From Magallana gigas (Eukaryota): 64,000 bases of DNA. Both the position numbers and the translations under genes were made by a program. Position 1 is the stretch's first letter, and the number at the start of each line of letters is the position of its first letter. The stretch lies in the NCBI RefSeq assembly GCF_963853765.1, contig NC_088857.1, forward strand, positions 38,068,001-38,132,000, given 5' to 3'. A model generated the notes under the pieces. The model worked only from the letters and a program-made list of their open reading frames with translations. It was not told the origin of the DNA and did not search any database. Shown here piece by piece: positions 6,401 to 29,943 of this stretch.

Positions 6401-9400
6401 TGAATGGGAAATGTCTCAAAAACAAGGTGTTGTTGATGATACAGTACTAGTGAGCAGCAATATGGAGAATCCTACAGGGGCAGATAATTTACAATGCCCT
6501 CGGAGGGATGAAAAAATGGAAAGGAAGGAAACTCAAACGGACTCTGTATCAAAATCTAGTTTGAAAAGTGAAGTTTTGTATTCATCTAGTCACACTGTCA
6601 ATTCCTTAGATGTCAAGTCAAATTCAGTAGTAAAGCAGAAAAATGATGAGTCATCTGCAGATTTCAATTGTTCACCTTACATGACAAACAATTCAACTGA
6701 GGTTTTGTGTGAATCAAATGATGGAAATTTTTCCCCCACTGAACAAACTGTTGTATGCAATGTGCAGATTTCTTCTACTAATTTGGAAACAAATGAATTT
6801 GATATGAAACATTTAAAAAAAAATGAAATGCAAGTGAATGATCAAGAAAATGTGAATGGTGTTCCACTTGGTCAAACAAAACAAGCCATGCAGAATTTGT
6901 CAAATGAAGAAATGCCTCCTGCATCTGCAGTTCATGACATGATGGGTTCAAATCTAGAATCTCAAGTTTCCAACTCAACTGCTACTCAACAACAGACATT
7001 ACCAGAATCTGGTGTAACTGTGGATCCCATATTGTTTGAAGCAGTGAAGGCTCAAATTGCTCAGGTGTACCCAGCATTTGCAGCAGATCCAAGTGTGTTG
7101 AACTCGATTGCCCTCCAACAGACTATGGTGTTACAGGCGTGTGTTGCATCAGGGGGTAATCTGGGCATCAGTGGGGCACAGCCTGTTGTGGGCAGTGAAA
7201 AAGTGGATACAGAGCCAAAATTAAGTCTACAAATTCCTTCAGAAAATTCAGCATGCAAGCAAGAAAAAGATACTTCCAGCTGTGTTCAACCTCAACCTCA
7301 TCAACAAAAAGAGACCACTGACTTTTCTTTGGAAACTTCCATCCCAACGTCAGCAAGTGGGGCCATTCCAAAACGTGTAAGTTCATACCAGAATTCTGGA
7401 ATTATGGCAAATCCTTTACCAAATAGGAAGGAATTTGACTCTCAATTGGAGCAGATTCAAGACATTGCACCCCCACCCGGTCTTAGTGGAACATCTATTG
7501 CAAGCAACAGTAGTGGATCCAAACCTTTTAAGTTTGATGCAGAAAATAAAGCTTGTGATCCCTATAATATGCCTAGTGTACAGTCAGGTATTGGAGCTTC
7601 AATAAATCTGGATCATGTTAATCAGCCTGACCCAGCAACGCTAAACACACAGTCGGCGTATATACCACCTCTCATCCCTAAATCATTTGACACAAACTTT
7701 GAGCATCAAGCTCCAGAGGTGTCAGAAGGTTTCATGAAGTCAAGTGTTGATTACTTTGGAAACCAAAATAAAACAGAACAATTATTAACCATTGGTCAGA
7801 AATCTTCAGCTTTTCCTTCAAACCCAAGCCTCATCAGCAAAAGAGAGTTTGCACAACCAAGTATTGCACCAAAGGAGATGTCAAATCAGAAACAGTTGGA
7901 GAACAGTTTGGATTCCATAAGTGACAAAATCAGCAGTATTAATCTCTCAGCTGGGATAGTAGGGGGTTCACCTAACATCTTAAGGAAAGAACATTTCCCT
8001 CAGAAGGGTGATTCAAAAATGGAATCCCTCAACCTGGATGAGATTGATGATGATGAGGAGGAGGAGGAGGAGGAAGATGAGAAAGATTTTGCAATTAAAT
8101 CTAAGGAATCTCAAGATCTGTTCAATCAGTGGCAGAAACCATCCTTAACAAAGAGAGAGAACACCCCTCCTCCAGAGGAGACTAAGTCCAACCAGCTTGG
8201 GATGCAGAAACTGGGCAGTGTGATGCACACACGTCGCACTCAGCTGGAGAAAGGTTCACTGAGGGACTGGATGAAGAAAGACACAGAGGGTAAAACAACT
8301 GGTGGATTTTTATTTATAATAAATGTCCATTAATTTATTGCTTCATGAGTAGATTTAAAGTGGGATTTATTGCTCAAGGTGCAGTTACCTAATATGTAAG
8401 TCATGTTAAATAATGGTGAAAGGTAATGATGTTTAAAGCAATATGAGGTGTATTTTTAGAATTTTATTTTGCTGCATAAATTTGCTAGTATGATAAGTCT
8501 GCATGTAGATTAAAATCTTATGACAAATAAAATTTTAAAGAATCGTTAATTTTCGTCAGAAGAAAAATTTCTCTTCTAAGGAATATATAGCAGACCAATT
8601 TTTTTACAGGCCGACAATAATTCAATTTTGCTTCATTTAAGGCTTCTTTACGGCTTTTCCAATAAAAATATGGCTAACAGAACTTTAAAAACAGTGATAT
8701 TTTTGTCATTTTAGTAGAAAATAACATTTTTTGTAAAAAAAAAAAAATTTCAGCACGAAAATTGCAGCTCATATTGCTTTAAAGATCTTTTCATAGAGTG
8801 AGAACCTATTCAAATTGAAGAACTTGTGTTCAAACCTATTGTATATTACCGGTATTTACATAACGAAATATCTTCAAACCATTTCTTGATTTTAGTGGAA
8901 GTGGGCCGTGCTGTAGATCAGTTGGATCAAATTTCTTATGGTTCTGACACACAACAGCAACTTGATGTCCAGGCACAACCTCAAGGACAGCCTAGATTAA
9001 TCAAAGAAACAACACCAGAAGAAGAAGAGAGCTGGACTCAAGTAAGCATAGCAGGTTTTTAAAAAAATATCAAAATCTGTGCCTATACAACTGTCCTCAC
9101 AGGTTGAAAAGTTCTGAAAACATTTTGATTTAGTTTAAAAAAAAAAGAATTTCTATTTAAAATGTGTTAGGTCACCAAGAAAGGGAAGAAGAAAGAGATG
9201 ACCCAGCCTCTTCCACCCTTGAATCCACAGCCTTCCATAAATCCACCACCTAAATTGTCTGCGACATCAAGACCATCTTCTGAAAAGAGCAACAACTTTG
9301 AGAGACTTGTTCAGAGACTTGGTGAAATCTTTGCAGGATTAAGCAGGTTTGTTGACTTATATGGCACTAAAACTGAATAAATAAAATTATTTGTAGCAGC

Positions 9401-11582
9401 TAAATTTAGGTAGTACATGTACCTTTACTATTACAGTTTTAGTTCTGTAGGATTTGATAACCCTAATGATGTAGTCAAGGTTTTCGATAAAAATGTTCTT
9501 TGTTAAAAAAATAAATATAAATAAATGGATTTATTACTTTTATTTTTACCTGTCCATGAAAATGTAAAATGGTTTAGAATGCTGAATGTCTTAAGATAGT
9601 GACTTTAAAATGGTGTTTTTATACTTCATTTATAAATGTTGAATTCTGCAGTGTGATTATCAGTACCGGTAGTCATAATCTCTTGTCCTTACAGAGAGGA
9701 ACTGATCAGTGTGATAACGTCGGTCAGGAAACAGAGAGGGGGCCTCAGTGGTTTAACGGTCAAGGACATTGTGGCTGATGCTAGGGTGTTTGCTACACGG
9801 CTCATGAAAAACAAGGTAAAACTGCAAGTGTTCAACACCCAATAGTTGCAGAACTTCAAATTGTATAGAACTGGGTTTCTTATAGAACATATATAGCATG
9901 TATAGCTCAAGCTGTAGCTCTACTGGAAATTTTTGGTTGATGGGACCTGGCTTTAAGACCATAAATTGAAATTAGACTACAGGTAGTCAAATATTTTCAT
10001 AAGTTCCAACTTTTGAAAACTTTCAACAATTAAATAGAATTTTCATAATAGTTTTGTATGGCTATAGTTGGCATTAACTCACTTTCAGATTGATAACAAT
10101 AATTTTAAAAAAAATGGCAAGTGCAGTGCCAAATTGTGATGAAATGTCATTACAGTAGACTTAATTATATTGTAGAAGCAGATATATTCGTGGAGGATTT
10201 AATTTCATTATTTTCGTTGGCAGTGTATATCAATGAAATTAAATCCATGACGAATTTTTAACCCAAGTATTAATAAATACAGAGTTGGTACACAATACAT
10301 TTTAGTGTATATATTAGATTGTGTTGAAATGCAATAATAGCTGGGTAATTAAGGCATTATAGGCGGGGGAATTCCCCGCCTCCCTGATCTTGGAGACAAC
10401 CCTGATAAATAGTATTTTAACACCTTTCCAATATCAGTTTTATCCACTTGTCGTTAGGTGTGATACCTACCCTGGAACGTATCTGTCAGAAGTCATGAAA
10501 TTTACTTGACTTGCATTAATTTACAAAATGAACTGTTGGACATGAAAGGTTCATGCATTTTATAAGGTACCATCATATTGTAAAGGAAAATGACATGTCT
10601 ATGTATATGATACTGTTGATAGTTTATAAACGAGTTCATTATTTGAATTTGCAGAATAAACTGGTGACTCAAACTTTCTGCGACTTTTCCATGCCATTCC
10701 AAAAGAACCAAGAGAGACCGGTGAGTGTCTACCTACATGCATATCAAATACTTTGTTCTTTACAAGAACTATCTGTTGCTGTTTCAAAATGTATCAGCAT
10801 AATCTTGCATTTGAAGTTGCATTCAATTCTGAAATAAACATAAAGGAAAGTTATTCAGAAGTTTTAAATGAAGGATTTGATGCTATTTTATTTTGAATAT
10901 TAGAATTTAATTCCTTTGAGTTTAAAAGCTTATATGGTAGAAGTTAATTGTCTTATTATTAAATTGTGTTTTGTGTGTTTGTTATTAAGTCTCTGAAAAG
11001 GCAAGGCTTAAAATTTGAGATATTTTATGAATTTTGTTTTAATCTAAACAGCCACCAAGGGATGATGAAGAGATATGCATCATTTGCCATGATGGCTTGA
11101 GTTGTGAAGAAGTCAAGAGTTTGGAATGTGGACATGTTTTTCATGCAGGGGTATGTATGTTGTAATATTTGCTCTGTTGTGCAATTATTGTAAATTCCTT
11201 ATATTATGCAAACACTTAATTCCGCCAATCATCCGTTTTGCATCAAATTGTGAGAATATGAAACCGCAAACACAGAATTTTTGTCATAGTTTCATTTATT
11301 TTACATCTGACAGAAAAAAGGAAGCGAGATTTAAAAATCTGCGAGATGTGCATTTCGCGATTTCACGAGGAAATTAATCCCTAGCGTTTTTAAATTAGGA
11401 ATCTACAGCATTTATTTGAAGACCATAGGTAATATGAAATCCGAAGTCTGCTCTGTGGTTACATGACTTGTTGTGCTTCCTTTCAGTGCATCAAACAATG
11501 GGTGTATGGCAGAGAAATGACTTGTCCCACATGTAGAAGACTGGTGCTGTTTCCTGAGGAATTTCCCAAACTGGGAAAGTAG
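18..11582 (+). CDS. TTC3: TTC3/DZIP3-like RING-H2 E3 ubiquitin ligase, 3' portion (5' exons lie upstream of the window)
   Basis: Phase-consistent GT-AG exons: 18-87, 5307-5423, 5783-6127, 6342-8289, 8896-9041, 9171-9346, 9695-9815, 11052-11150, 11487-11582 (TAG). The last two exons give the RING-H2 CIICHDGLSCEEVKSLECGHVFHAG|CIKQWVYGREMTCPTCRRLVLFPEEFPKLGK*. The CPTCR..L.PEEFP terminus and the preceding NNFERLVQRLGEIF...VRKQRGGLSGLTVKDIV helical block match TTC3/DZIP3 as I recall them; TTC3 versus DZIP3 orthology cannot be settled here. Confidence 0.8.
1097..1235 (-). repeat. 3' LTR (139 bp)
   Basis: Preceded on the minus strand by the purine tract AAGGAGGGAGAGAAGA; differs from the other LTR at one site (C1225 vs T3645). 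Confidence 0.95.
1255..1582 (-). pseudogene. Partial integrase core
   Basis: TTSTRTIDVLRTIFSRNGLPVTIVSDNGPQF...TSPYHPSSNGLAERFVQTFK. The HHCC domain, the first catalytic Asp and the C-terminus are deleted. Confidence 0.88.
1549..2817 (-). pseudogene. Partial reverse transcriptase + RNase H
   Basis: FSKIDLKQAYLQ, YRYNRMAFGIASAPAIWQ, MLDD, CDASPYGLGAV, ERPIAFAS, NYSQIDKEALGI and TDH motifs are present; the RT N-terminus is missing. Confidence 0.9.
2804..3433 (-). pseudogene. Truncated gag with an in-frame TAG
   Basis: MAAFGLIGKIDPFDETIEPWESYVERFEQYF...EYVAQLKKL*IYCDFNASLNEKLRDRVVCGIRHPHIQKRLLSEKDLTFEKA. The ORFs 3077-3433 and 2804-3040 are in the same frame, separated by the stop at 3077-3079. 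The zinc knuckle and protease are absent. Confidence 0.85.
3501..3513 (-). other. Primer-binding site TGGCGACGAGGAT
   Basis: Starts 3 nt inside the 5' LTR. Complementary to ...ATCCTCGTCG-CCA, which I recall as the 3' end of tRNA-Ser(GCU), a primer typical of Mag-clade elements. Confidence 0.75.
3517..3655 (-). repeat. 5' LTR (139 bp)
   Basis: Direct repeat of 1097-1235; TG...CA ends; adjacent to the PBS. Confidence 0.95.
11188..11408. mobile_element. Degenerate Tc1/mariner-type MITE in the intron that splits the RING domain
   Basis: Imperfect terminal inverted repeats TTGTAAATTCCT / AGGAATCTACAG; TA on the left flank. Confidence 0.4.
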
Positions 11583-14663: not shown

Positions 14664-16085
14664 ATGGAAGGAAGTGATGAGGAAAAAACAACTAATAAAA
14701 CTGACGAAAAACAGGAGGATGCTGAAAAGGACTTTGAGGACATCCAACTCGATATCGACACAGACGTAGCCAAATACAGCCACGAAAAAGAGAGTCCTAG
14801 ACCGAGAGAAAACGGAAAACATCCAGAAAATGTTATCACCGACCAGCCCATTGACGCAACGCCTCCGCCATCTTACGCCAATGACGTCACAGTTCATGGC
14901 CTTGACCCTCCTGTGGTCCGACAAGGACCCTTGAAACCAAAGCCGAAGGACTTTGTGGTGACGTCATGTTTTGTCATTCTTTGCTGCAATTTTATATTCG
15001 GGCTTTTAGGATATCATTTTGGAGGTAAATATTATTGGGCCTTCAGATATACAAATGCTAGACATTTGGATCATTTCGTCTTTTCGTTGCTTATTCTAGG
15101 AAATGTTTAAAAGTGATCCGAACGGTCCGTATGCGAAAATACCGTATAAATTCGAAATTATATTTCAAAACATGTAGCCTTTTATCTCCTGCAAAAATTG
15201 ACAAATATTAGTGCCCATGGTGATCACGATTATAATATATATTGATATTCGTGCCATCCAACATGTACATAATTGTGTCGTAGCCATGAATTCAATATCA
15301 AACATTTCCTATAAAATCTTTGTCACGCCGGTCGCTACGTCCTTATTGCGATAATGTCGCGTCCTTAAATATCGTAAAACGCCAAGGTACACGCAGTAGA
15401 GTCCTACAGCGCCGCAACAACGCAGCGGCATCATCTTCTTCATCTTTTCATTTTTCTGCGTTCACACAGCGACTCCACGGTATTTCTAGTGCGTTGTCAG
15501 CCAGACCTTAAAAAACTTGAACAATCGATGACTGTTTTCAAAACTTGTTGTGGACAACTATGTAAAAAGTAGCATTTGCAAATGTTTCAGGACCTATTTG
15601 AGGGCGTAGATGAAATTCATGCCATTTTGTTCTGATGTTATTAGCTCTTCTATGTTTTCTAACATCAAACAACAGTTATTCTTTGTAGACCTGACTACTA
15701 AGATTGTTGTCTTTCACAAATTCTTTGGATTATTTCAATTACAAACTTGGTGTGACAGGGCCTTAAGCATCCTTATATCAAATTTTCATACAGGAGAAAC
15801 GTGCCACCTTTTTACATTTTATGTACATGATTTATTTTTGCAAAACATGTACAGTATTATATAAGTTGTTTAAAAAAATAGCTTTTTATTGCAGTCAAAG
15901 CTAATCACGCATGGCAGTTGGGAGACGAGCATTCCTCACGAAAACGTGCCAAAGTTGCTATGATCTTCGTGATCTTGGGTATCATCGCGGGAATTTCCAC
16001 GTACGTGTTAGCGCTCACGCTGTACTTCACGCTGAATAAGGATGAACCCGTGAGCTACCATCACTCAAACACGCAAGCAGGATGA
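14664..16085 (+). CDS. CD225/dispanin-family membrane protein (PRRT/SynDIG/IFITM-like), about 183 aa
   Basis: Exons 14664-15024 and 15895-16085 (phase 1, TGA). Acidic/Pro-rich N-terminus with PPSY, then PKDFVVTSCFVILCCNFIFGLLGYHFG|VKANHAWQLGDEHSSRKRAKVAMIFVILGIIAGISTYVL, i.e. two hydrophobic segments with CC and a basic linker typical of CD225. An additional upstream exon is possible (acceptor at 14658). Confidence 0.8.
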
Positions 16086-18324: not shown

Positions 18325-18469
18325 AATAAGGAATCATTCTTTGAATATTATGTGGTGATAATTTTGGTCGGAGCGTGGGAAAATCTATCATAAAGCCCAT
18401 GGATTAGACCACGCCCCGACCAAAATTATCACCTCATAATGCTAAAGAATGATCTTATTCCCTAAATAA
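18325..18469. repeat. Palindromic repeat, copy A (family with 3 copies in the window)
   Basis: The arm AATAAGGAATCATTCTTTGAATATTATGTGGTGATAATTTTGGTCGG and its reverse complement; related to 52610-52727 and 58700-58816. Confidence 0.8.
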
Positions 18470-18920: not shown

Positions 18921-20381
18921 TCATTTGGGTATGTCGGAAGGATCTATACACAATCCGGAGACATCATCAAAACAGACTTTTGTGGAGTTCAGTGGACTGG
19001 TTCGACAAATGTTCGACTGGAGAGTGGGTTCTACATTAGCAGACAACTTGGCGGCAAGGTAAGCAAACAGGAGAATCTCTAAAACAAGAACAATAAATGT
19101 CACGATCATGCATAATCTCTCAATTAAGAGAGCGACCCGTTTCCACGTCACTTCCGTCAAAATCGCGTTCGAACTTTTGATGGCGTCATCTTTAGACATG
19201 CGTTGATCCTCGACCGACGACTCGTCTATTTTGTTGTTTTTTGCGACATTTCTTTTGTAATTGTTGGCAATTTTACGAGAACATGGGTTGAAGAAAAAAG
19301 TTACGATTCGTTTGATAAGGAATGGAATCGGTGCTGTTTCTTCCCGCTGGTTCAGCATCGCCGTCAGAAAGCTTGAACATGTGATGAAGGCACTGAGAAG
19401 AAACTGAAAAACCAGGAAATATATGATAAGCGGAACCGGATTGGAGGTTTCTGGGATTAACCCCGCCACGTAGATGAGATAAACCGTGAAAGACAGAAGA
19501 AGAGCAACGCAAAACGACAATCGATCCTCGGGTACCGCCGGGATGAAATAAACAACGGTGTTTAGCATACTGAGCACGAATAATGGAACAGCAATGTTCA
19601 GGAATAGGTAGGCCGGTCTTCGAATCAACTTAATTGGAAAGACGAGGACTCGGCGTTCGTTATTGTGTTCCTGGCCATAGCGACTAGGCGCAAGGTCCAG
19701 ATCACATGGCTGCATAGGAAAATAAATCCATTTCGCGTTATCGTAGAACACTTGAGTCTTTTCAGGCATGTTGGCTATCACCGTCGAAGTAACCACGAAC
19801 TGAACGGAGCATTCATGTTCATCGAACGGAAAGTTCTCCAGATTTGGCTGACAATATGTATCTGTTTTCACCAAGCCATCATAAAAGAGAACGCCAATGT
19901 AACCAAGAACCGCAGCTTCATTTCCTTTATCCTTAAAAATATCCATTTCACCCAGTGGGTTAAACAAACGTATACCTGGTCTCCAGATTTCTCCTAGTTT
20001 CATTGGTAAGTACGAGATGGTGTAATTAATGACCGTCTTTTCTTGTAGTATTGCTATGGTATCGGTATCCCACTTCAAGCGCTTGTCGCTCCATAACATG
20101 AATATAGAAGAAAGAAGTTTCAACTCTCCGTTGATTTCGTCAAACCTTTCTAATCTGGATACGTCAAACCGTAATCCAACTCTTGTAAGAGGTTCATCCG
20201 AAACCTTATATCCACCGTTCTGACTAAAAAGTTGGTTTCGTAGGTTAGACGAAGCGTTTAAAAGTTGAACCTTTTCATTTTCTTCGAAATTGAATTTTTC
20301 CGACAGATAATCCACAGAGATACCGTAAGAAAATCTCAATGACGCACAATATAGAAACAGTACATATTTTAGCGTCTTCAT
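18921..20381 (-). CDS. Intronless Cys-loop ligand-gated ion channel subunit (divergent nAChR-like, non-alpha), 486 aa
   Basis: Signal peptide; WSDKRLKW; IWRPGIRLFN; Cys-loop C-QPNLENFPFDEHE-C (13-residue spacing); RRP before M1; four hydrophobic helices; M2 DRLSFCVALLLSFTVYL. Single uninterrupted ORF. Confidence 0.92.
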   Translation of the reverse strand: MKTLKYVLFLYCASLRFSYGISVDYLSEKFNFEENEKVQLLNASSNLRNQLFSQNGGYKVSDEPLTRVGLRFDVSRLERFDEINGELKLLSSIFMLWSDKRLKWDTDTIAILQEKTVINYTISYLPMKLGEIWRPGIRLFNPLGEMDIFKDKGNEAAVLGYIGVLFYDGLVKTDTYCQPNLENFPFDEHECSVQFVVTSTVIANMPEKTQVFYDNAKWIYFPMQPCDLDLAPSRYGQEHNNERRVLVFPIKLIRRPAYLFLNIAVPLFVLSMLNTVVYFIPAVPEDRLSFCVALLLSFTVYLIYVAGLIPETSNPVPLIIYFLVFQFLLSAFITCSSFLTAMLNQREETAPIPFLIKRIVTFFFNPCSRKIANNYKRNVAKNNKIDESSVEDQRMSKDDAIKSSNAILTEVTWKRVALLIERLCMIVTFIVLVLEILLFAYLAAKLSANVEPTLQSNICRTSPLNSTKVCFDDVSGLCIDPSDIPK

Positions 20382-21687
20382 TTTGAGACCTGATTTGCGT
20401 CTTTTTAGAGATCAGCTGCCACCAGTACCGTTGAAATTGGAGAGCTTTCGTTCGTCACACTACAAGTACCGGTCAGCTTCAGGTTGAATTTGTCTTGAAA
20501 ATGGAATACAATTCATCATAATTTAAAGTTTAATACCACAGTGTAAGATAAATAATTAATAGACCACTAAGGCTCAAGAGAGTATTACACAAACGTAATT
20601 TTGAGGTAAAATAAAAACATTTTCAGTAAAAATTGATTTACTTCTAGTAAATGAAGCAAGTATAATTAGAGGGGAAAACGAAAAATGGACAAACAACAGG
20701 CTCGATCGAGCGTACTGTGGTGCATATCAATAGTTTCCTGCATTGTATTTATTCTGTGCAGTGAATGAGGTATCCCATGGGATTTGCCCCTGGTGACACA
20801 TGACCTGCACTGATACGATTCTATGTTGTTATATCAATTGAATGTCATAATTTCTATATTCGTGGTAAAGTGTGATACAAAGCACCATTAATGTAATGAT
20901 TATTTACCTAAACCGACAGATCAGACAATATAACGAGTCTGTACGAAAAGCCTTGCATCTTCGTCTTTTCAGAAATGCATTTGACAGCATGGTTACGTTG
21001 TATACAGTCGAATTATTTTTCTATAACAGAAAAATATGTTGCAGGTTTTTGAATCTGAATGTAAAATGTTTTAAAACGCTCCCCCCCCCCCAAAAAAAAA
21101 AACACATTAAAAATGAATGTTAAATGAAACGAAAAAAACAATATTTTGTTTTCCAGGTTACCGTTTCTATCAAAATTTGTCGATTTCTTGATAAATAAAC
21201 ATACCTGTCAATGAAAACAATTGAAATCAATGAATGATTTCATTCTTAAGATTTCCTCTTTCACACCTCCCCTCTTCATACCCGGAGAAATTAACAGGAA
21301 CGAAAATACCTTTATCCCGGGGATTTATGATGGTAAAATCTGCAGGTAGTTTTTTTTATATTCATTCCGAAACAGGACACCTCAAACAATTTTTCAATAT
21401 GATCATCCGGGTACTTTTTATGTCGTTTGCAATTTCAAATCCCCACAGACTTATTTTTATTTGTGGCTGTGTATTGAAACTTAAAAAGATAGAGAAGGCA
21501 TTTCAAAACGGAGAAAAACTTGAATTGATTTTGAAGCAAAGGCATTTATGATTATCGAAATATTTAGCGAAAAGTAGTTGAAGCAGAAACTTGAAAAAGA
21601 AAACAGTAGTACTTTGTAATTTTTAATCAGCCACAGCAAGATATCAGTATGTCAAAGATATGAATAGACCACCTCTTTTCAATTCTA

Positions 21688-23148
21688 TCAACGAATGAGG
21701 TCAAGGGATATACACTCGGTTACGTTATCGATACAAAAATGTGACGTCATCTCTTTCATTGGGTTGGTCCGACAAATGTCGGACTCCAAGGCAGGATCCA
21801 CTGACGAATTAAGGAGAGAGGCGAGGTACGCAAACAGCAGAATTTCTAGGAAGAGAATGATGGTGGTTATGGTGAAAAACATTCTGTCCACGACCGTCGA
21901 GATATTGTTCCAAGTGATATTACTGGAAAGAGTTTCATCCGATGACGTGTTTACATCATATTTACTCTTTAAGTCACACTCGTCCGTATTAGTAAGTTTT
22001 GCGTCATTAGTGTTGTCCAGCTCTACATCTCGAACACGCTTTCTTTGAAATCGTTGGAATGCTCGAAGGATTACACGGGGAATCTCTTTCTTCCCTTGTT
22101 TTTGATTAAGCATGGCTGTCACGAAGCTGGAACAGGTTATGAAGGCACTGAGCAGAAACTGGAACAAAAGAAAGTATATTATCATCGGAACAGGGTTTGA
22201 AGTTTCCGGAATAAGTTCCGCCACGTAAATGAGGTACACTGTAAAGGAAAGCAGCAGGGCAATAGAGAAGGAAAGCCTGTCTTGTGGAACAGCGGGGATG
22301 AAGAAGACGACTGTATTCAGGATGCTGAGCATGAACAGAGGAACGGCTATATTGACGAAAAGGAACGAGGATCTCCGGATGATCTTGATCGGGAAAACAA
22401 GAACTCTTCGTTCTTTATTGTTTTGCCTTCCGTATCGACTTGGTGCTAAATTCAGATCACAAGGTGTTTGTGGGTAATATATCCACTTCGCGTTATCGTT
22501 GAATAGCTTTGTTTTCTTGAGTGAATTGGTAATAACTGTTGAAGTTGCTACAAATTGAACGGAGCATTCGTGTTCGTCAAATGGGAAATATTTCAAATTT
22601 GGTTGGCAGACTGTTTCCGTTTTCAGTAAACCGTCAAAAAAGACAAACCCTTCTTCGTGCACGACGGCTTTCTCATTTTCTGTCCCTTTGAATATGTCGT
22701 CTAACGGATTGAACAAACTGATATCTGGTTTCCACAATGACTTTAACTTGACATCTATGTATGCTACAGTCAAAGACAGTTTTGTCTTCTCTTGGTATAT
22801 GGACATACTGTAGGGATTCCAAGACAGTCGAAGATCGCTCCAGAATATAAAAACAGAAGATATTAGCTTTAAATTCCCTGCAACTTCATCGAACTCCTGC
22901 AATCTGGAAACTTCAAAATTGAAACCCACCCGTGTTATTGGATCATCGTCATCCTTGTACCCAGATTCGGGGCCCATGATAGAGTCCCGGATGTAGGCAG
23001 TGTAATTCAAAAGTTGGCGCTTTTCTTCCCAATTGAAATTGAATTTCCATTTCTGATAATCCTCGTACTGGCACATGGAAACGCACACTTCGTTAACAAA
23101 TATGAAAAATAAACCTAATCCAACTTTGTTTCCCATTTTTTTTAACAT
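21688..23148 (-). CDS. Intronless Cys-loop ligand-gated ion channel subunit, tandem paralog, 486 aa
   Basis: WSDLRLSW; LWKPDISLFN; Cys-loop C-QPNLKYFPFDEHE-C; M2 DRLSFSIALLLSFTVYL. Collinear with 18921-20381 throughout. Confidence 0.92.
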   Translation of the reverse strand: MLKKMGNKVGLGLFFIFVNEVCVSMCQYEDYQKWKFNFNWEEKRQLLNYTAYIRDSIMGPESGYKDDDDPITRVGFNFEVSRLQEFDEVAGNLKLISSVFIFWSDLRLSWNPYSMSIYQEKTKLSLTVAYIDVKLKSLWKPDISLFNPLDDIFKGTENEKAVVHEEGFVFFDGLLKTETVCQPNLKYFPFDEHECSVQFVATSTVITNSLKKTKLFNDNAKWIYYPQTPCDLNLAPSRYGRQNNKERRVLVFPIKIIRRSSFLFVNIAVPLFMLSILNTVVFFIPAVPQDRLSFSIALLLSFTVYLIYVAELIPETSNPVPMIIYFLLFQFLLSAFITCSSFVTAMLNQKQGKKEIPRVILRAFQRFQRKRVRDVELDNTNDAKLTNTDECDLKSKYDVNTSSDETLSSNITWNNISTVVDRMFFTITTIILFLEILLFAYLASLLNSSVDPALESDICRTNPMKEMTSHFCIDNVTECISLDLIR

Positions 23149-24335
23149 TAAATCTCGTGAATTTTATTCGTGTTAAAATGATTTTGTAAAAATTTCTCAC
23201 CACATAATTTCGTCCTTTTAAGCACCCTTAGAAAGGAGACATCCAATTTCAATATTTGATCGGGTTTTCAGCGGTGCATTAGACTAAATTAAAAGGAGAG
23301 ACGCTGCTCATCATTTAATCATAATAAACAGAAATTGCTGGGTCGTAAATTTCAACAACCATTAAGGACATCAGCAGTACACAACAGTCGCCGTCCATTA
23401 CACATATAGTAACTAGGTCTGCTCAGTCAGAAAGGGTGGTGAACTTTATTTAGTCGCAAAATTCACGGCATTTATTTTCATTTTTATGATAAACATTTGA
23501 TCGCAAATAACACGTACTGCTTGAGGGCTTCTTCCATCTTCGCTAGCCGAGGAGTTTCCGATACAGTTCAATCACCACAAACAATCTAACTGTATAAAAA
23601 AAAACGTTGAGTTTTACCCCAAACCAATGGCTACAACGTGTTAAGCATTTGGTATTGAGGTCAGTAAACCACCTTCTCCTGCGCAAATTGATTACCTGAT
23701 CCAATTGACTAGTATCCACTTTTATTAACACGGTTTGCAATGTGCTTTGATTCTTCAAACTATCGTCGCTGCTGCATCCATTTTACTTTCATTCCTAAAA
23801 ATCAGTGTTTCCTTCAAAGGATTTCTTTGCTACGCTACTTAAAATGGGCCCTTAAACGTTATTTGTTGTATAATCCGTTAGGATGTTTTTCCGTTAAAGT
23901 GGAAATAAAATTGTGACCAGTAGCTTTCATATTAATTTCAAAGTTATAGTATTTTTCTTTTTTCTTATGGAGGTTTCCTATATTCTAATGTAGCCACCCC
24001 TCACCCCCCCCCCCCCAACTTGTGTCCTCTCTTTCTCTGTTACTTAGTTAATATGGTATAACTTTAAATTTACAGCGATGTAACGTCTTCTCCCTATTTT
24101 TCTTTTTAGCAACAGGCACATACAAACATTGAACCCTATTTGATGGCCAGTTTTCATTCTCTTTGCATGAAGTATACTAGTACTTTTAAAGGGGTTTCTA
24201 TTTTAAAAAAATATGAATTCCAATTTGAGCATCTTAAATTTCCGACTTCCATAATTTAACAACCTTACCATAATTATAAAAAAAGCTTTTTACTGACTAC
24301 TAGTATTTTGTTCCGGGAAAAAAAACATATTTTAA

Positions 24336-25110: not shown

Positions 25111-27313
25111 TTAAATACCCTAGCTCATTTCCATTAATTTCCTAATTATTTCCCATAAAATGTAGCTTTCATTTTAACAAACCTGAAAGCCCATTACTAA
25201 AAGATGTACATGCTTTGTATTAAGTATGGCTGAAAAGGCCATGTGGTTTCGGGTAAATGAAGATAATGTGAAAATTAATGTGGAAATAAACTCCAAGAGA
25301 CGCGAGTCAATTTTTTTTTTCACCAGAGAAGCTCATTTAGGCATTCAGTTCAGGTTTAATAAAAATGAAATGGAAAAACTATTTCATCATGAAAAATGAT
25401 CAAACAATTTGATCTAAGTTATCTAAATTAAAATTACAATTTAGTTTAAATATATACCGGTATTTATACCGATATTCAAACAAAAAGCAGAGCAGTATAC
25501 AGTTTATCCCGCTGACAATAAGTTTTCAGATACAAACAAAACAATTGGATTTTGTAAAACTTTATTAACGCAGCTTTAATGATAAAATGATTTTCATTCA
25601 ATATAATTCACAAACTTACATATATTGACACAATATCTTCAAAATCCAACAAACTGGACGGAACTTAGAAAAATCACATAAACGGAAAAAAAGATTATGA
25701 AGAATCTTGTAAAAAAAACAAAACAAAGGGGAGATCAGGTTGAATCATCATGTATCTGTTTTATGTTGTACCTAATACTCCCTTGTTTTCGTTGAAACAA
25801 TACACCGTAGTACTTAATATCTTCAATAATAATCATTTTGATTTTTGTATCACATTGATATCACATATATCTTTTATTTATAGTCTGTAATTGCAAGAAA
25901 TGTAGCACACTGATTAAAAGAAAACCTGTAAAAATGTAATCTAAAATGTTATTCAATATTTAAAAATACTAATAAACAACTACCAGGTATAATGACCTTT
26001 GGCAAGAGTAACCCTTTCTGAGTAATAAATAAAACAAGTCAAGTCACTCACCCTTTATTTTTTTTTTTCAAAAATCCTAAATTCTGTGCTTGAATCTTTA
26101 AATATATCTATAAGAAGTATTGACTCATTTTGTTACAAAAAATTACAAATATTAGTAAAAAAAAAAAGAGAAAACATGAATGATAAAATCGTAATAAAAA
26201 TCAAATATGCATAACTCCTCATTAATTCAGGTTTCTCACTATGAGAAAACTGTACATTTACATTATGTTCTTCATTCACACACTATCAACCAGTGTTTTG
26301 CGACACATATATTAATCTAGTAAGAGCATGGATACTGATCCTATTGGATACCCTTTACCTAATCCACCCCCTTCATACTTCTTGTCCTTCAATTAACAAA
26401 AAAAAAAATACCTCCACATCTTTTTATAAACAGGTACACTTTCTGAATTTCTTTATTTTTTTTTAGCACCACAAGACAAGTTTATGAGAGTACATTATAA
26501 TTTTTCCCCTTTACTATCATTTTCCTTTTGTATTAGTCACTTGGTGTTTGCTTTCTAAACAGAAACAGAGATGGGTTATTTTCTAGGCAGCTTGAGTTAA
26601 AGCTGAAAGAATACACACATTTTAATTGTTTAAATCAATCATTCATGAATATACATGGCTAGACAAGTGCAGATCAATACTATTATTGAAATAGACCCAG
26701 CAGTCAAGAACACAAGAAGTGACAGATCATATAGACAATTAGACATTGCTTTAAAATGGTTAAGACAGTCTGAAAAAATGCTAAATTAAAAAAAAGTGTT
26801 TAATCATCTTGAGGTTTTAATTAAATGCACAATATTGCACTTGCATCACATATATGTACATACATGTATACTGTATGTTTATGTATGGTGTTGTACTTGT
26901 GTAAAGTGCCATCTTTTATTACATAGAAAAAAATTCTATGTTACTTTCTGTTCCTGTTAATGCACACTATATTTGTAATGCTAAGGTACATGTTTTATGG
27001 GGATATATTTCAGAAAATTTTAAATTGTAGAAGTAAGATATGTACCTATGTATTAAAAAAGAATAGCTACAACGATATTTTTCATTTGCTGATAATTTTG
27101 CAAGCCTTTTCTTATTGTAGATTGTAGATGTTTTTAACTTTTAACCAAACAAACATTTTCAATGTTACAGTATTTGGTTTTCTTTTCAGGTGGAAATTTT
27201 GAAAAATATATTTTTGATATCAACCTTTGAATTTTAAGTGTTGAAGAACTAAAGTATGCTATTTATTTAAGTTAGACAAAATGTTCTAACAACTAGTAAC
27301 TTTTTCATACAAA

Positions 27314-29943
27314 TTATGGGTCACTGTGTAGCATTTTTTGCGTGGCACTGTTTACAATCTCCAAACTGTCTTTGTCCAGCTCCCGAATTAGAATGAGCAC
27401 TGCTTGTAACACATGGGCATTCTGAAAGACAAAAGTTTCAACAAAAATATTCACATAAAGATAAAGTTTTGTTTAATTGTTAAGAACATGTACACACAAA
27501 ATATTTCAATACAGCTTAAATAATAGAAAATGCTTTTGCCATAATTCAACATATGTGTATCTCTTTAAAAAAAAACCAAACCTGTTCTTTCATGCATCAT
27601 ACTTTATATAAGATAGTGGTAGTAGATTTGAAGAAACCAGGAAAAACTTACCCGTGACTTTTCAGTGGGCTTTTGAACAGGTTTAGAAGTGGTAATCTTC
27701 TCAAATGGCAGTGGTTTCAATCCCAGCTCTTCTCTGATTTTGCTGGGGAAAAAATGTTCACATAAATTGTCTGACAATTCTTAGGATGCTTTACAAATAA
27801 TATAATAAGGTACTGACATTTTGACATATCCATTTGACCATCATATTTGATGAGAATCACAACTGTACATGCATTACATATAGAAAAGATAGGAATAATA
27901 TATTTAAGAAAAAACATCCTCACCCTTTTATATTATTTAGAAATACTTGCATAAAGTACATTACATTTAATTCAACTATTCATCTATTGATCAGAAATAT
28001 TGTTTCATCAAACTAACTTTGTTTCCTCCCAGCTTAGAGTCACAGGGTCTAATAAGGATTGCTTGGGTTTCACAGGAGGTGGTTTAGGTTTGGTTTCTGG
28101 AGTTTTCTTTACTGTACCATCATCTGTCTGTTTGTCTTCACCTGTAGCATTTTCATTCGTCTCATTTTCAATTTCCTCTTGGTCCCTTCCATTTTCAGTA
28201 AATTGTTCTTCATCATTTAGTACTTCTTCTAAATCTTCAGGGGGAGGTAACTGATCACCATTTTCCTCAGCTTCTTTTCTTTCCTCTTCCGATACCACTG
28301 AAAAGGGATCAATTTTTTAAAAAAATATTTTATAAGCATCAATAACAATGAAATGTTGCATTACTGTAATGAAAATTTTTCTTGTAATTTACAAAAAAGA
28401 GCTCCGATTCCATAATATTAACATTATTAATCACTTTTACCTTTTATTTCAATTTTTTTCAACATCTTCTCAATAATGTATTATATCATAAAGCTAAAAA
28501 AAATCTCGTTTAAAAAAAAAAAAAAAAAAAATCACTACTAATAAATCAATTGCACTTTCATACAGTGTAAACTAATCAGCTGGTCATAGTGTAGTTGCAA
28601 ATTTATGGTCCTCCAAGCACAAATACTTTGATCTCGGCAACCCTACAGAAAAGAATCACATACCGACATTGTCAAGTTTCTGTAGATTTGGAAGAGTGCG
28701 TAGAACTGTAGCTCTGTAATTCTTTCCTTCAGCACAAGGGTTATCAGCTAGCCATAGATTCCGCAAGCGTGTCAGGTTCTTTAAATAATGTATTTCTGAG
28801 AGATTTTCAATTTTATTTTTCCTGATGTATAGTTCTGTTAGCTGTTTACATCGTGCAAAATCCTTCAAAGTTGAGATGCTGTTTACACTGTATAAATAAT
28901 TAAATGGTACGGTAAACACAAGATTACCAAATCATACTGATGTAGCATTCTTTTATTGCTAAACTCTTTAAGCACTACTGAAAAATTTAAAAAATATGTT
29001 TCCATGCAGTCCAAAAATTATCCCATATAGAATTAACAAAAAAAAAAACCTTTTTTTTTTACATAGGCATTTACTTGTTAGAAAAGACATGTATTACTGA
29101 TGAATGAAAGATTGTAGCTACCATGATACACAGCTACAGCTAGTTAATTAACCAATAGCTTCAACACATACAGTAACACTGACCTGACACTACAGACTTC
29201 TAAATTTGGCATACTCCTTACAACACTTATATCACTGATTTCTGATCCCCTGAAATTGTAAAACAAAGGAGTTTTCTCAATACAACAGTTGCTTCATGAT
29301 ATTCAGGATGCATGATGTTTAGTAATACATACATTCCAAAAACTCGGTAAGTTTTTAGTTTTGTACATACATGTATTGTGTTGACCTCAGACAAAATCCT
29401 AAAAATTTTGAATCTCTGTATGATGTTTGTTTTCGTTCCTGTGACATTTTCCAGATAAAAACAGATGATGTATCAATGAAGACATCTTGGATTTTTCTGT
29501 CCATTTTTCAATTTGAATTGTACTTTTTTGACAAGTAAGTCTATTTTAATTTCAAATCACCGAAAAGTGATGGAATTCTAGCAAAAACTTGGGCAGATTG
29601 TACTTTATATTTTTAGCATTCTTTCGAGCAAAAATTAAAGCATTTGACCGTAGTGAGTAAAGTAAGTCCTTAAAGGAAAAAAACCGGAACATTAATGGAA
29701 AAGAAATGTTACTGGAAGTGGAATGCATTTTCTCTTGTTGAATCATGTTTAAAACGGTTTTCATGACTTAGAAACAGTATTCAATTACCATATAAATCAC
29801 TTTCAATTGCGTAAATCATCATTTAGTGACTAGGCTTTCATAAAAACATACCAAAAATTTAGCTTTGTAACACCATCTAGATCGACAGCTCTAGTTCTTG
29901 CCAATACAAGACCCTCTGTCAACTTTTCTTCCTCGTATTCCAT
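27314..29943 (-). CDS. CFAP410: Cilia- and flagella-associated protein 410 (C21orf2), LRR protein, about 286 aa
   Basis: Exons 29943-29852, 29249-29184, 28887-28664, 28297-28018, 27742-27652, 27421-27314, all phase-consistent. [60 protein letters not shown]...LWLADNPC...[12 protein letters not shown] and the C-terminal [23 protein letters not shown] match CFAP410. Confidence 0.92.

What the first reader, a model, noticed from the sequence alone, without database searches (positions are those of the whole stretch)
18921..23148. Tandem intronless Cys-loop channels that have lost the acetylcholine-binding aromatic box: candidate orphan chemoreceptor pair
Seen: two single-exon ORFs with a Cys-loop and M1-M4. 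Aligned by eye to recalled alpha7 nAChR, both show loop D W55->S (SSIFMLWSD / SSVFIFWSD), loop A Y93->F (RLFN / SLFN), loop B W149->T (CSVQFVVTS / CSVQFVATS), no vicinal Cys in loop C, and Y195->R (RYGQEHNNERR / RYGRQNNKERR). The segment after the Cys-loop is also about 5 residues shorter. Established: bivalves have large expansions of largely intronless nAChR-like genes, and cephalopod chemotactile receptors arose from nAChRs by losing these residues. Inference: these subunits do not bind acetylcholine and may be a bivalve-specific sensory receptor lineage gated by environmental ligands, protons or ions.
Basis: partly seen in the sequence, partly recalled or inferred. Interest (0 to 1): 0.82.

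Follow-up and report, generated by a model that had tools for sequence, protein, structure and literature searches.

The report
Oyster orphan nicotinic-like channel gene pair
Two neighbouring intron-free oyster genes encode working-looking ion-channel subunits related to nicotinic receptors that have lost most of the acetylcholine-binding residues, but this is the normal state in a very large, already described bivalve gene expansion, so the pair is a fairly ordinary member with an unknown ligand.

Summary
Two intact 486-aa single-exon ORFs lie on the minus strand (18921-20381 and 21688-23148) and are 55% identical. Each has a Cys-loop, M1-M4 and a cation-type pore.

Profile alignment to solved nAChRs confirms loop D Trp->Ser, loop B Trp->Thr, second loop C Tyr->Arg, and no Cys-Cys. 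Three details need correcting:
- The first loop C Tyr is kept.
- Loop A Tyr->Phe is conservative.
- The stretch after the Cys-loop is net 1 residue shorter, not about 5.

The genes are functional. dN/dS is 0.13-0.25, and loops B and C are the best-conserved ECD parts after the Cys-loop. orfB has an RNA contig ending 10 nt past an ATTAAA signal.

The pair belongs to an oyster-only subfamily on a long stem branch, at a syntenic locus where copy number varies. However, nearly all of the 150 nearest relatives (the named ones are bivalves) also lack the aromatic box, and the loop B Trp was lost before oysters arose. The pair shows no special affinity to cephalopod chemotactile receptors.

The expansion, its intronless tandem arrays and its divergent binding sites are published (Jiao 2019; MolluscaGenes 2026). 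The scan noted a similar pair elsewhere in this genome (s1-382461).

A small, conserved family argues against a diversified chemoreceptor repertoire. Nothing tests a sensory role. Verdict: new member of a known kind.

The parts
21688..23148 (-). orfB: single-exon CDS, 486 aa, nAChR-like Cys-loop cation-channel subunit. The true start may be Met5, as in ortholog P0001.
   Evidence: ORF. Pfam LBD 78 bits and TM 59 bits. AF2 model pLDDT 85.7. Foldseek top hits are nAChR delta, beta and alpha7. dN/dS 0.135 against the ortholog CDS in L001.
18921..20381 (-). orfA: single-exon CDS, 486 aa, paralogous nAChR-like subunit, 55% identical to orfB.
   Evidence: ORF. Pfam. BLASTP 55% identity. dN/dS 0.25 against L002. 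Its lineage includes C. virginica P0010.
22564..22608 (-). orfB Cys-loop, C181-x13-C195, with FPFD.
   Evidence: Sequence. Invariant in the clade.
22531..22563 (-). orfB loop B (S196-I206). Thr202 replaces the cation-pi Trp. TST is invariant.
   Evidence: HMMER alignments to alpha7, beta2 and alpha6. Entropy 0.32 against 0.92 for the rest of the ECD, p=0.004.
22393..22464 (-). orfB loop C region (P229-F252): extra Cys230, retained Tyr239, no Cys-Cys, invariant Arg247-Arg248 at and next to the alpha7 Y195 position.
   Evidence: Profile alignment to alpha6. Conservation p=0.009. Basic composition.
22855..22857 (-). orfB Ser98, at the position of the loop D Trp (alpha7 W55).
   Evidence: Ungapped profile alignment. 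Invariant Ser in 14 oyster sequences.
22765..22800 (-). orfB clade-specific insertion of about 10 residues after the WxP motif (about residues 117-128). Predicted as an extra beta-hairpin.
   Evidence: Gaps in every PDB alignment and in Pinctada P0015. Strands 116-119 and 124-127 at pLDDT about 93.
22213..22287 (-). orfB M2 pore helix: -1' Asp, 0' Arg, 9' Leu, 13' Val, 20' Glu. This is a cation-type signature with an intact hydrophobic gate.
   Evidence: Alignment to alpha7 M2. Clade table.
21691..21810 (-). orfB extracellular tail after M4 (residues 447-486) with three invariant Cys (459, 472, 479).
   Evidence: Model confidence here is only about 68-70.
21612..21687 (-). orfB 3'UTR, with an ATTAAA poly-A signal at 21622-21627.
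   Evidence: Sequence. The RNA-run contig ends at 21612, 10 nt past the signal.
23149..23600 (-). Upstream flank of orfB covered contiguously by the RNA-run contig. Probable 5'UTR of at least 450 nt; the start site was not mapped.
   Evidence: X1 depth about 44, contiguous with the CDS.
19809..19853 (-). orfA Cys-loop (C177-x13-C191).
20382..21611 (.). Spacer between the two genes. No RNA-run depth in X1 from 19966 to 21531.

Best explanation
orfA and orfB are two old tandem paralogs of an oyster-specific (Ostreidae) subfamily. The subfamily lies within the large, mostly intronless, bivalve-expanded radiation of non-alpha nicotinic-receptor-like genes.

SHOWN
- Each encodes a complete pentameric-channel subunit: signal peptide, beta-sandwich ECD with Cys-loop, M1-M4, a cation-type pore (-1' Asp/Glu, 9' Leu) and a short intracellular loop.
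- Both are under purifying selection.
- orfB is transcribed and polyadenylated.
- The canonical acetylcholine site is dismantled on both faces: loop B Trp->Thr and loop C Tyr->Arg with no Cys-Cys on the principal face, and loop D Trp->Ser on the complementary face.

INFERRED
- They form cation channels that acetylcholine does not gate at the classical site.
- The rebuilt loops B and C are the most conserved ECD segments after the Cys-loop, and they are identical across paralogs and genera. So the inter-subunit pocket is still used, and it binds one conserved, non-cholinergic ligand. The invariant Arg pair makes a ligand carrying a negative charge more plausible than a quaternary amine.
- This is not a diversified panel of environmental chemicals.
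- Whether the ligand is endogenous or external, and which cells express the genes, remains unknown.
For: - Intact ORFs and domains.
- Confident full-length nAChR-type model, pLDDT 85.7, with nAChR subunits as best fold matches.
- Best sequence matches are nAChR alpha6 and beta at 134-136 bits, against 5-HT3A at 106.
- Pore residues are invariant in the clade.
- dN/dS is 0.135 overall, 0.105 in the ECD and zero replacements in M1-M3 for orfB. It is 0.25 for orfA. Paralog dS is saturated.
- S98, T202, Y239, R247 and R248 are invariant in 14 sequences from Crassostrea, Saccostrea and Ostrea. Loops B and C are more conserved than the rest of the ECD, p=0.004 and 0.009.
- The oyster clade is monophyletic (SH-aLRT 100) on a stem of 1.69 substitutions per site with a compact crown.
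- The nearest relatives are all bivalve where named: Pinctada, Tegillarca, Mactra, Mizuhopecten, C. gigas paralog, Argopecten, Mercenaria.
- Synteny is conserved, with LRR_9/HIND, CD225 and RING/TTC3-like neighbours, and copy number varies.
- The RNA contig covers orfB but not the spacer and ends 10 nt after ATTAAA.
- The intronless tandem expansion is already described (PMC6896357).
Against: - There are no functional data of any kind. Ligand, stoichiometry and ion selectivity are inferred from sequence.
- Loops B and C border core beta strands, so part of their conservation could be structural.
- Loop C and the C-tail are the least confident parts of the model (pLDDT about 67-72). No coordinates or pentamer model were available, so what actually lines the pocket was not seen.
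- RNA evidence rests on one run's contigs, and that tool warns that holes in contig cover prove nothing. One of those contigs is chimeric.
- orfA has almost no RNA support.
- Two poly-A runs gave no reads at about 1% sampling.
- One loop C Tyr and the loop A aromatic remain, so a weak or atypical amine site is not excluded.
Confidence: 0.5

Rival explanations
1. They are accessory (structural) subunits. orfA and orfB do not form a ligand site themselves. Instead they occupy non-binding positions in heteropentamers with canonical alpha-type oyster nAChR subunits, as vertebrate beta1, beta3 and alpha5 do, and tune conductance, trafficking or desensitisation of a channel that is still gated by ACh.
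For: - The best PDB sequence and fold matches are non-alpha muscle beta and delta subunits.
- There is no Cys-Cys.
- The transmembrane core and pore are extremely conserved.
- Oysters keep 33 alpha-type subunits that could act as partners (PMC6896357).
Against: - An accessory subunit should be relaxed at former binding loops. Here loops B and C are the most constrained ECD segments after the Cys-loop, with replacement residues invariant across genera.
- Vertebrate accessory subunits keep an aromatic residue in loop B (Trp in beta2, Tyr in Torpedo beta). This clade has Thr.
- The long stem branch followed by stasis looks like a change of function, not loss of one.
Confidence: 0.23
2. They are an oyster sensory chemoreceptor lineage, analogous to cephalopod chemotactile receptors. 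They would be expressed in sensory epithelia (mantle edge, palps, gill, osphradium, larval organs) and gated by environmental chemicals, protons or ions.
For: - They share features with CRs: intronless, nAChR-derived, canonical box largely lost.
- CRs set a precedent (cited in PMC10338036 and PMC13174522).
- The oyster osphradium senses L-amino acids at micromolar levels through unknown receptors (PMC10102104).
- Low or restricted expression would be compatible with a rare sensory cell type.
Against: - They are not related to CRs beyond the shared superfamily.
- The family has only 2-3 members per species and an invariant pocket, unlike expanding, diversifying chemoreceptor repertoires.
- The traits cited are shared by many bivalve nAChR-like genes, so they carry little specific information.
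- There is no tissue evidence.
Confidence: 0.12
3. They are still cholinergic. The receptor binds ACh or choline through a non-canonical arrangement that uses the retained loop C Tyr239, loop A Phe146 and the Phe two residues after the loop D position.
For: - Two aromatic box positions survive, and a conserved Phe sits at loop D +2, on the same face of the strand.
- NCBI pipelines name the orthologs as nAChR subunits, though this is by similarity only.
Against: - The loop B Trp that makes the cation-pi contact is Thr.
- An invariant Arg pair sits where Tyr195 should be, which would repel a quaternary ammonium (the roles of these residues are established nAChR knowledge).
Confidence: 0.08
4. 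They are decaying retrocopies with no function, whose open reading frames survive by chance.
For: - Jiao 2019 notes that more intron-poor nAChR genes have low or no expression.
- Disrupted copies exist at the same locus in S. echinata.
- RNA evidence for orfA is weak.
Against: - Both ORFs are intact at 486 aa.
- dN/dS is 0.13-0.25, with zero replacements in M1-M3.
- Orthologs are intact in at least three genera.
- orfB is transcribed with a poly-A signal.
Confidence: 0.03

Closest known systems
Bivalve-expanded intronless, tandemly arrayed nAChR genes (Jiao et al. 2019, BMC Genomics 20:937, PMC6896357)
   Same: - Single-exon genes in a two-gene tandem array.
- An oyster genome.
- A highly diverged LBD without alpha-type Cys-Cys and without conserved principal-site residues.
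- The nearest relatives are all bivalve where named.
   Different: - This particular subfamily is restricted to oysters and sits on an unusually long stem.
- It has its own fixed signature: loop B TST, SRYG...ERR in loop C, a 10-residue hairpin insert, Cys230 and a 3-Cys C-tail.
- That paper did not single the subfamily out or characterise it, as far as the text I read shows.
Cephalopod chemotactile receptors (octopus CRT1, squid CRB1, PDB 8eiz)
   Same: - Derived from nAChRs.
- Intronless.
- Lack the canonical ACh-binding motifs.
- Cation-channel architecture.
   Different: - They are not close relatives. CRB1 scores lower than vertebrate nAChRs and is absent from the best profile and fold hits.
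- CRs form a large, diversified cephalopod family expressed in suckers. This family is small and conserved, and its expression site is unknown.
Alpo4, orphan nAChR-like receptor of the annelid Alvinella pompejana (PDB 8bx5, eLife 2023, PMC10338036)
   Same: - A lophotrochozoan orphan nAChR-like subunit.
- No loop C Cys-Cys.
- Phe in loop A.
- Not gated by ACh or serotonin in tests.
- Similar sequence distance (79-105 bits).
   Different: Alpo4 keeps the full aromatic cage: loop B Trp159, loop D Trp65 and both loop C Tyr. The oyster proteins have Thr, Ser and Arg at three of these positions.
Vertebrate non-alpha or accessory nAChR subunits (muscle beta1 and delta, neuronal beta2)
   Same: - Best sequence and fold matches.
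- No Cys-Cys.
- The same pore motifs (acidic -1', 9' Leu).
   Different: - The vertebrate subunits keep an aromatic loop B residue, and those that form a complementary face keep the loop D Trp.
- They are multi-exon genes.
- They lack the C-tail cysteines and the hairpin insert.

Membership tests
Cys-loop pentameric ligand-gated ion channel superfamily | Extracellular beta-sandwich with a 13-residue disulfide loop (C-x13-C) carrying the F/YPFD motif. | tested here: met
   C181-x13-C195 with FPFD in orfB and C177-C191 in orfA. Pfam PF02931 above cutoff. Invariant in the clade.
Cys-loop pentameric ligand-gated ion channel superfamily | Four transmembrane helices M1-M4, with M2 lining the pore. 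| tested here: met
   PF02932. Hydrophobic stretches. Helices 260-283, 288-312, 322-349 and 413-447 in a model with pLDDT 85.7.
Cys-loop pentameric ligand-gated ion channel superfamily | Assembly into pentamers. | not testable with these tools
   Only a monomer model without coordinates was available.
Nicotinic acetylcholine receptor family (cationic branch) | Closer to nAChR subunits than to 5-HT3, ZAC or anionic receptors. | tested here: met
   In the profile search against PDB, alpha6 scores 136 bits, muscle beta 134.7 and 5-HT3A 106.5. The Foldseek top 50 are all nAChR chains.
Nicotinic acetylcholine receptor family (cationic branch) | Cation-selectivity signature: acidic -1' residue and no Pro-Ala-Arg motif. 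| tested here: met
   -1' is Asp or Glu in 14 of 14 sequences, with 0' Arg and 9' Leu.
Nicotinic acetylcholine receptor family (cationic branch) | Aromatic box for ACh: loop A Tyr, loop B Trp, two loop C Tyr, loop D Trp. | tested here: not met
   Phe, Thr, Tyr (kept), Arg and Ser respectively.
Nicotinic acetylcholine receptor family (cationic branch) | Gating by acetylcholine. | not testable with these tools
   Needs electrophysiology.
Alpha-type nAChR subunit | Vicinal Cys-Cys at the tip of loop C. | tested here: not met
   No CC anywhere in the loop C region of either ORF or of any clade member.
Cephalopod chemotactile receptors | Membership of the CR clade, with CRs as the nearest characterised relatives. 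| tested here: not met
   CRB1 (8eiz) scores 68.6 bits, against 84-90 for vertebrate beta and alpha7. CRs are absent from the top 60 profile hits and the top 50 fold hits. The nearest relatives are bivalve proteins. No explicit tree with CR sequences could be built, because no CR sequence was available by id.
Cephalopod chemotactile receptors | Intronless gene. | tested here: met
   Uninterrupted ORFs here and in Saccostrea and Ostrea genomic loci.
Cephalopod chemotactile receptors | Expression in contact-chemosensory cells and gating by poorly soluble environmental molecules. | not tested
   The runs available carry coded labels and no tissue information. Poly-A runs gave no reads.
Bivalve-expanded intronless nAChR-like genes (Jiao 2019) | Intron-poor gene in a tandem array, with nearest relatives confined to bivalves or molluscs. 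| tested here: met
   The two ORFs are separated by a spacer of about 1.3 kb. Tandem copies occur at the syntenic locus in S. echinata. Named relatives are all bivalves.

The most novel reading that the evidence does not exclude
After a burst of change on its stem, the oyster subfamily rebuilt the orthosteric pocket. The new pocket is polar and basic, with invariant Thr-Ser-Thr in loop B and an Arg-Arg pair in loop C. It would suit an anionic or zwitterionic ligand such as an amino acid or an acidic metabolite. The M4 C-tail would be tied covalently to the ECD through the four invariant extra cysteines (Cys230 plus three in the tail). The result would be a new pharmacological class of cationic Cys-loop receptor, possibly the unknown receptor behind oyster amino-acid sensing.
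Probability: 0.1. Interest if true: 0.65.

Novelty: new member of a known kind. Interest (0 to 1): 0.3.

Why it matters
If the conserved rebuilt pocket binds a defined non-cholinergic ligand, this small and tractable pair would be a convenient entry point for de-orphanising the hundreds of bivalve nicotinic-like channels whose ligands are unknown. It has only two genes, no introns and clear orthologs in farmed oysters. It would also show how a cationic Cys-loop receptor can swap an aromatic cage for a polar, basic site.

As it stands, the finding mainly adds one well-described subfamily to an expansion that is already documented. It does not by itself give evidence for a bivalve chemosensory system.

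Tried and rejected
1. First AF2 model from the 16-sequence clade alignment. It had pLDDT 58.6 and was unusable. I replaced it with a 62-sequence alignment.
2. Single-sequence HMMER alignment for loop D. It gave Phe opposite W55 by way of two compensating gaps. I rejected it in favour of the ungapped profile alignment.
3. More copies in the window. tblastn found none.
4. Raw-read evidence of expression and strand. The two poly-A runs gave no reads over either gene at about 1% sampling. The only read pile-up, at 18400-18440, is a short repeat.
5. An explicit tree with cephalopod CRs, 5-HT3 and ZAC. This was not possible, because PDB chains carry no protein ids and I did not paste sequences. I used bit-score and fold rankings instead.
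6. Pocket geometry and Cys-Cys distances. These were not obtainable, because the tools return no coordinates and no multimer model.
7. Tandem repeats or retroposition hallmarks around the genes. None was found, and none would be expected given the saturated dS.
8. The 650-aa ORF at 6381-8333. It has no Pfam or Atlas match and is unrelated to the finding.
9. dS-based dating of the A/B duplication. dS is saturated, and the branching order of the five oyster sublineages is unresolved.

Full report
**What is there**

The window holds two uninterrupted 486-codon ORFs on the minus strand, at exactly the coordinates given: orfA at 18921-20381 and orfB at 21688-23148. They are 55% identical over almost their whole length. 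tblastn finds no further copy in the 64 kb.

Both match Pfam Neur_chan_LBD and Neur_chan_memb above threshold, but weakly for this family. The LBD scores are 60 and 78 bits, and the profile is matched only to about position 145 of 216. So the second half of the ligand-binding domain is strongly diverged.

Each protein has the following features:
- an N-terminal hydrophobic signal-like segment;
- a C-x13-C Cys-loop with FPFD;
- four hydrophobic transmembrane stretches;
- a short, variable intracellular loop of about 60 residues;
- an extracellular tail of about 40 residues after M4.

With a 62-sequence alignment, AlphaFold2 gives a confident full-length model (mean pLDDT 85.7, pTM 0.76). Its best Foldseek matches are all nAChR chains: muscle delta and beta, and alpha7.

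**The aromatic-box claim**

I tested this by alignment to solved receptors, not from memory.

| Position | Canonical residue | In this clade |
|---|---|---|
| Loop A | Tyr93 | Phe146 |
| Loop B | Trp149 (cation-pi) | Thr202 |
| Loop D | Trp55 | Ser98 |
| Loop C, first Tyr | Tyr188 | Tyr239 (retained) |
| Loop C tip | Cys-Cys | absent |
| Loop C, second Tyr | Tyr195 | Arg247 |

- For loop D, single-sequence HMMER put Phe opposite Trp55 by opening two compensating two-residue gaps.
- The first loop C Tyr is the Tyr of SRYG.
- Alpo4 carries Phe at loop A inside an intact cage (PMC10338036). So the loop A change is conservative.
- Overall, three of the five box residues and the Cys-Cys are gone.
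- The claim that the segment after the Cys-loop is about 5 residues shorter does not hold as a net figure. The span from the second Cys-loop Cys to the beta10 Phe is 57 residues, against 58 in alpha7. Loop C is 4 shorter and the loop B-F region is 3 longer.
It is absent from every solved nAChR and from the Pinctada relative, and it folds as an extra beta-hairpin at pLDDT about 93.

**Are the genes functional?**

Yes, on three lines of evidence.

*Selection.*
- orfB against its closest ortholog CDS (L001, 94% amino-acid identity): dN/dS is 0.135 overall and 0.105 in the ECD, with no replacement at all in M1-M3.
- orfA against L002: dN/dS is 0.25.
- dS between the two paralogs is saturated, so the duplication is old.

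*Pore.* The pore keeps an acidic -1' residue, 0' Arg, 9' Leu and 13' Val in all 14 oyster sequences. This is a cation-type pore with an intact hydrophobic gate.

*Transcription.*
- An RNA-seq run (X1) has contigs covering orfB from 21612 to beyond 23600 at an even depth of about 44. Depth is zero across the spacer and most of orfA.
- The contig's 3' end lies 10 nt past an ATTAAA hexamer at 21622-21627. That spacing is what an mRNA 3' end looks like.
- This supports transcription of orfB. The tool warns that holes in contig cover prove nothing, and one X1 contig is chimeric.
- For orfA, only one on-record RNA run holds 19% of its sampled words.
- Two poly-A raw-read runs sampled at about 1% gave no reads on either gene. 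Expression is therefore low or restricted.

**Where the pair belongs**

The word-based search found close relatives only in oysters (Saccostrea, Crassostrea virginica, Ostrea edulis and unnamed assemblies), plus a 31%-identical Pinctada protein.

The exhaustive profile search of 1.84 billion representatives gave 9564 hits at E<=0.001 and 577 at E<=1e-30, with a gradient of scores:
- the oyster clade at 845 bits;
- then Pinctada (419), Tegillarca (389), Mactra (358), Mizuhopecten (313) and another C. gigas paralog (280);
- then a long plateau at about 160-200 bits.

The named plateau members are also bivalves: Argopecten and Mercenaria.

In a maximum-likelihood tree:
- The 14 oyster sequences form one clade (SH-aLRT 100). 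It sits on a very long stem of 1.69 substitutions per site and has a compact crown.
- That clade is nested in a 29-sequence clade (support 100) together with the Pinctada, Argopecten and C. gigas paralogs.
- The orfA lineage includes C. virginica.
- The order of the five oyster sublineages is unresolved.

**Why this lowers the finding**

I tabulated the pocket positions over all single-domain hits.
- Almost none of the 150 nearest relatives has the loop D Trp, the loop A Tyr or a loop C Cys-Cys. The only one with Cys-Cys is a horseshoe-crab alpha9-like protein.
- No member of the 29-sequence clade has a loop B Trp. They carry Tyr, Phe, Leu, His or Met. So the Trp was lost before oysters arose, and only the step to a non-aromatic Thr belongs to the oyster stem.

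The loss of the acetylcholine box is therefore the normal state of a very large bivalve radiation. It is not a peculiarity of this pair.

That radiation is already published:
- Jiao et al. 2019 report 99-217 nAChR genes per bivalve, mostly intronless and in tandem arrays, with 16 two-gene arrays in C. gigas. Of its 132 nAChRs, only 33 are alpha-type and only 13 of those keep intact principal sites. The authors suggest that LBD diversity may support binding to diverse ligands (PMC6896357).
- The 2026 MolluscaGenes preprint reports divergent clades with substitutions at agonist-coordinating positions, and a 'CR-like' clade that includes bivalves (PMC13174522).
- The scan itself recorded a very similar pair on another piece of this genome (s1-382461).

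**Relation to cephalopod chemotactile receptors**

Squid CRB1 scores 68.6 bits, below Torpedo beta (90), beta2 (85), alpha7 (84) and 5-HT3A (73). CRs do not appear among the 60 best profile hits or the 50 best fold hits. Any resemblance is therefore parallel, not shared descent. I could not build an explicit tree with CR sequences, because none was available by id.

**What is specific to the oyster subfamily**

In 14 sequences from three genera, the following residues are invariant: Ser98, Thr202-Ser203-Thr204, Trp222, Tyr224, Cys230, Tyr239, Arg247-Arg248, and the three tail cysteines 459, 472 and 479.

Loops B and C are significantly more conserved than the rest of the ECD. Mean entropy is 0.32 and 0.55 against 0.92, with Mann-Whitney p=0.004 and 0.009. 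Part of this may be structural. Even so, a former binding site that had simply fallen out of use should drift, and this one has not.

Together with the long stem and compact crown, this suggests a single change of function followed by stasis. The invariant Arg pair at and next to the Tyr195 position makes a quaternary amine an unlikely ligand and a negatively charged group more plausible. That last point is inference only.

There are four extra extracellular cysteines, an even number. They could tie the post-M4 tail to the ECD, but I could not measure distances.

**Genomic context**

The locus is syntenic across oysters. In Saccostrea the receptor is flanked by three genes, and the same genes are found in this window:

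| Neighbour | Position in this window |
|---|---|
| LRR_9/HIND gene (upstream) | about 27270-28376 |
| CD225 gene (downstream, opposite strand) | 14742-16082 |
| RING/TTC3-like gene | 11481-11579 |

Copy number at the locus varies:
- S. cucullata has one copy.
- S. echinata has an intact gene, a second copy 2.7 kb downstream that is split over two reading frames in the intracellular loop, and a degenerate fragment.
- O. edulis has one intact gene and an N-terminal fragment.
- This window has two intact genes.

This is ordinary tandem birth-and-death evolution. All genomic orthologs are single-exon.

**Mechanism and rivals**

My best reading (about 0.5) is that these are orphan, non-alpha, cation-selective Cys-loop subunits. 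Their rebuilt inter-subunit pocket binds one conserved non-cholinergic ligand, and the source of that ligand is unknown.

- **Accessory subunits (0.23).** They serve in heteromers gated by ACh through alpha partners. The best matches to beta and delta subunits favour this. The constraint on the rebuilt loops and the non-aromatic loop B count against it.
This is not excluded, but nothing specific supports it. The family is small and invariant, whereas chemoreceptor repertoires usually expand and diversify. There are no tissue data.
- **Residual cholinergic binding (0.08).**
- **Non-functional retrocopies (0.03).**

**Verdict**

The inference that these subunits do not bind acetylcholine canonically is well supported. 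The claim that this makes them a candidate sensory lineage is not supported beyond analogy. The pair is a new, nicely delimited member of a known and published expansion.

Noticed in passing
window 21691-21810 and 22459-22461 (orfB Cys459/472/479 and Cys230); orfA equivalents Cys226, 459, 470, 478: Four extra extracellular cysteines are invariant in all 14 oyster sequences: one at the start of the loop C hairpin and three in the tail after M4. This is an even number, so there may be two extra disulfides, perhaps tying the M4 tail to the ECD. The Pinctada relative keeps Cys230 and the first tail Cys, but not the last two. Another scan note (s1-403254) covers this.
   Followed up: partly
window 19539-19799 joined to 22448-23600 in run X1: One 1433-nt contig of the RNA run joins the orfB 5' part and upstream flank to a 261-nt piece of orfA on the opposite strand. 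The window does not have this arrangement. It is probably an assembly chimera between the paralogs, but a structural variant is not excluded.
   Followed up: no
window 18400-18443: A short stretch just downstream of orfA attracts many RNA reads in both poly-A runs. About 95% of them continue into unlike sequence on both sides. This looks like a repeat of about 40 nt shared with abundant transcripts elsewhere (a mobile-element or UTR motif), not expression of this locus.
   Followed up: no
window 1549-2817 (-): A 422-aa ORF with reverse transcriptase and RNase H domains (RVT_1, RT_RNaseH, RT_RNaseH_2). This is a fragment of an LTR-type retroelement pol gene.
   Followed up: partly
window 6381-8333 (+): A 650-aa open frame rich in Ser, Gln and Asn, with an acidic run. 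It has no Pfam hit and no usable Atlas neighbour. It is probably one large disordered exon of a nuclear or scaffold protein, or a chance ORF.
   Followed up: partly
window 14742-16082 (+), 11481-11579, 27270-28376 (-): Exons matching the Saccostrea neighbours of the receptor gene: a CD225-family protein (73-75% identity), a RING/TTC3-like protein (100% over 33 aa) and an LRR_9/HIND protein (up to 97% identity). They show conserved synteny of the locus across oysters.
   Followed up: partly
L003 14135-15563 and 7738-8691 (Saccostrea echinata): These are uncalled extra copies beside the annotated ortholog. One is near full length and 66% identical to orfA, but split over two reading frames near residues 385-392 (a frameshift or an assembly error). 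The other is a degenerate partial copy.
   Followed up: partly
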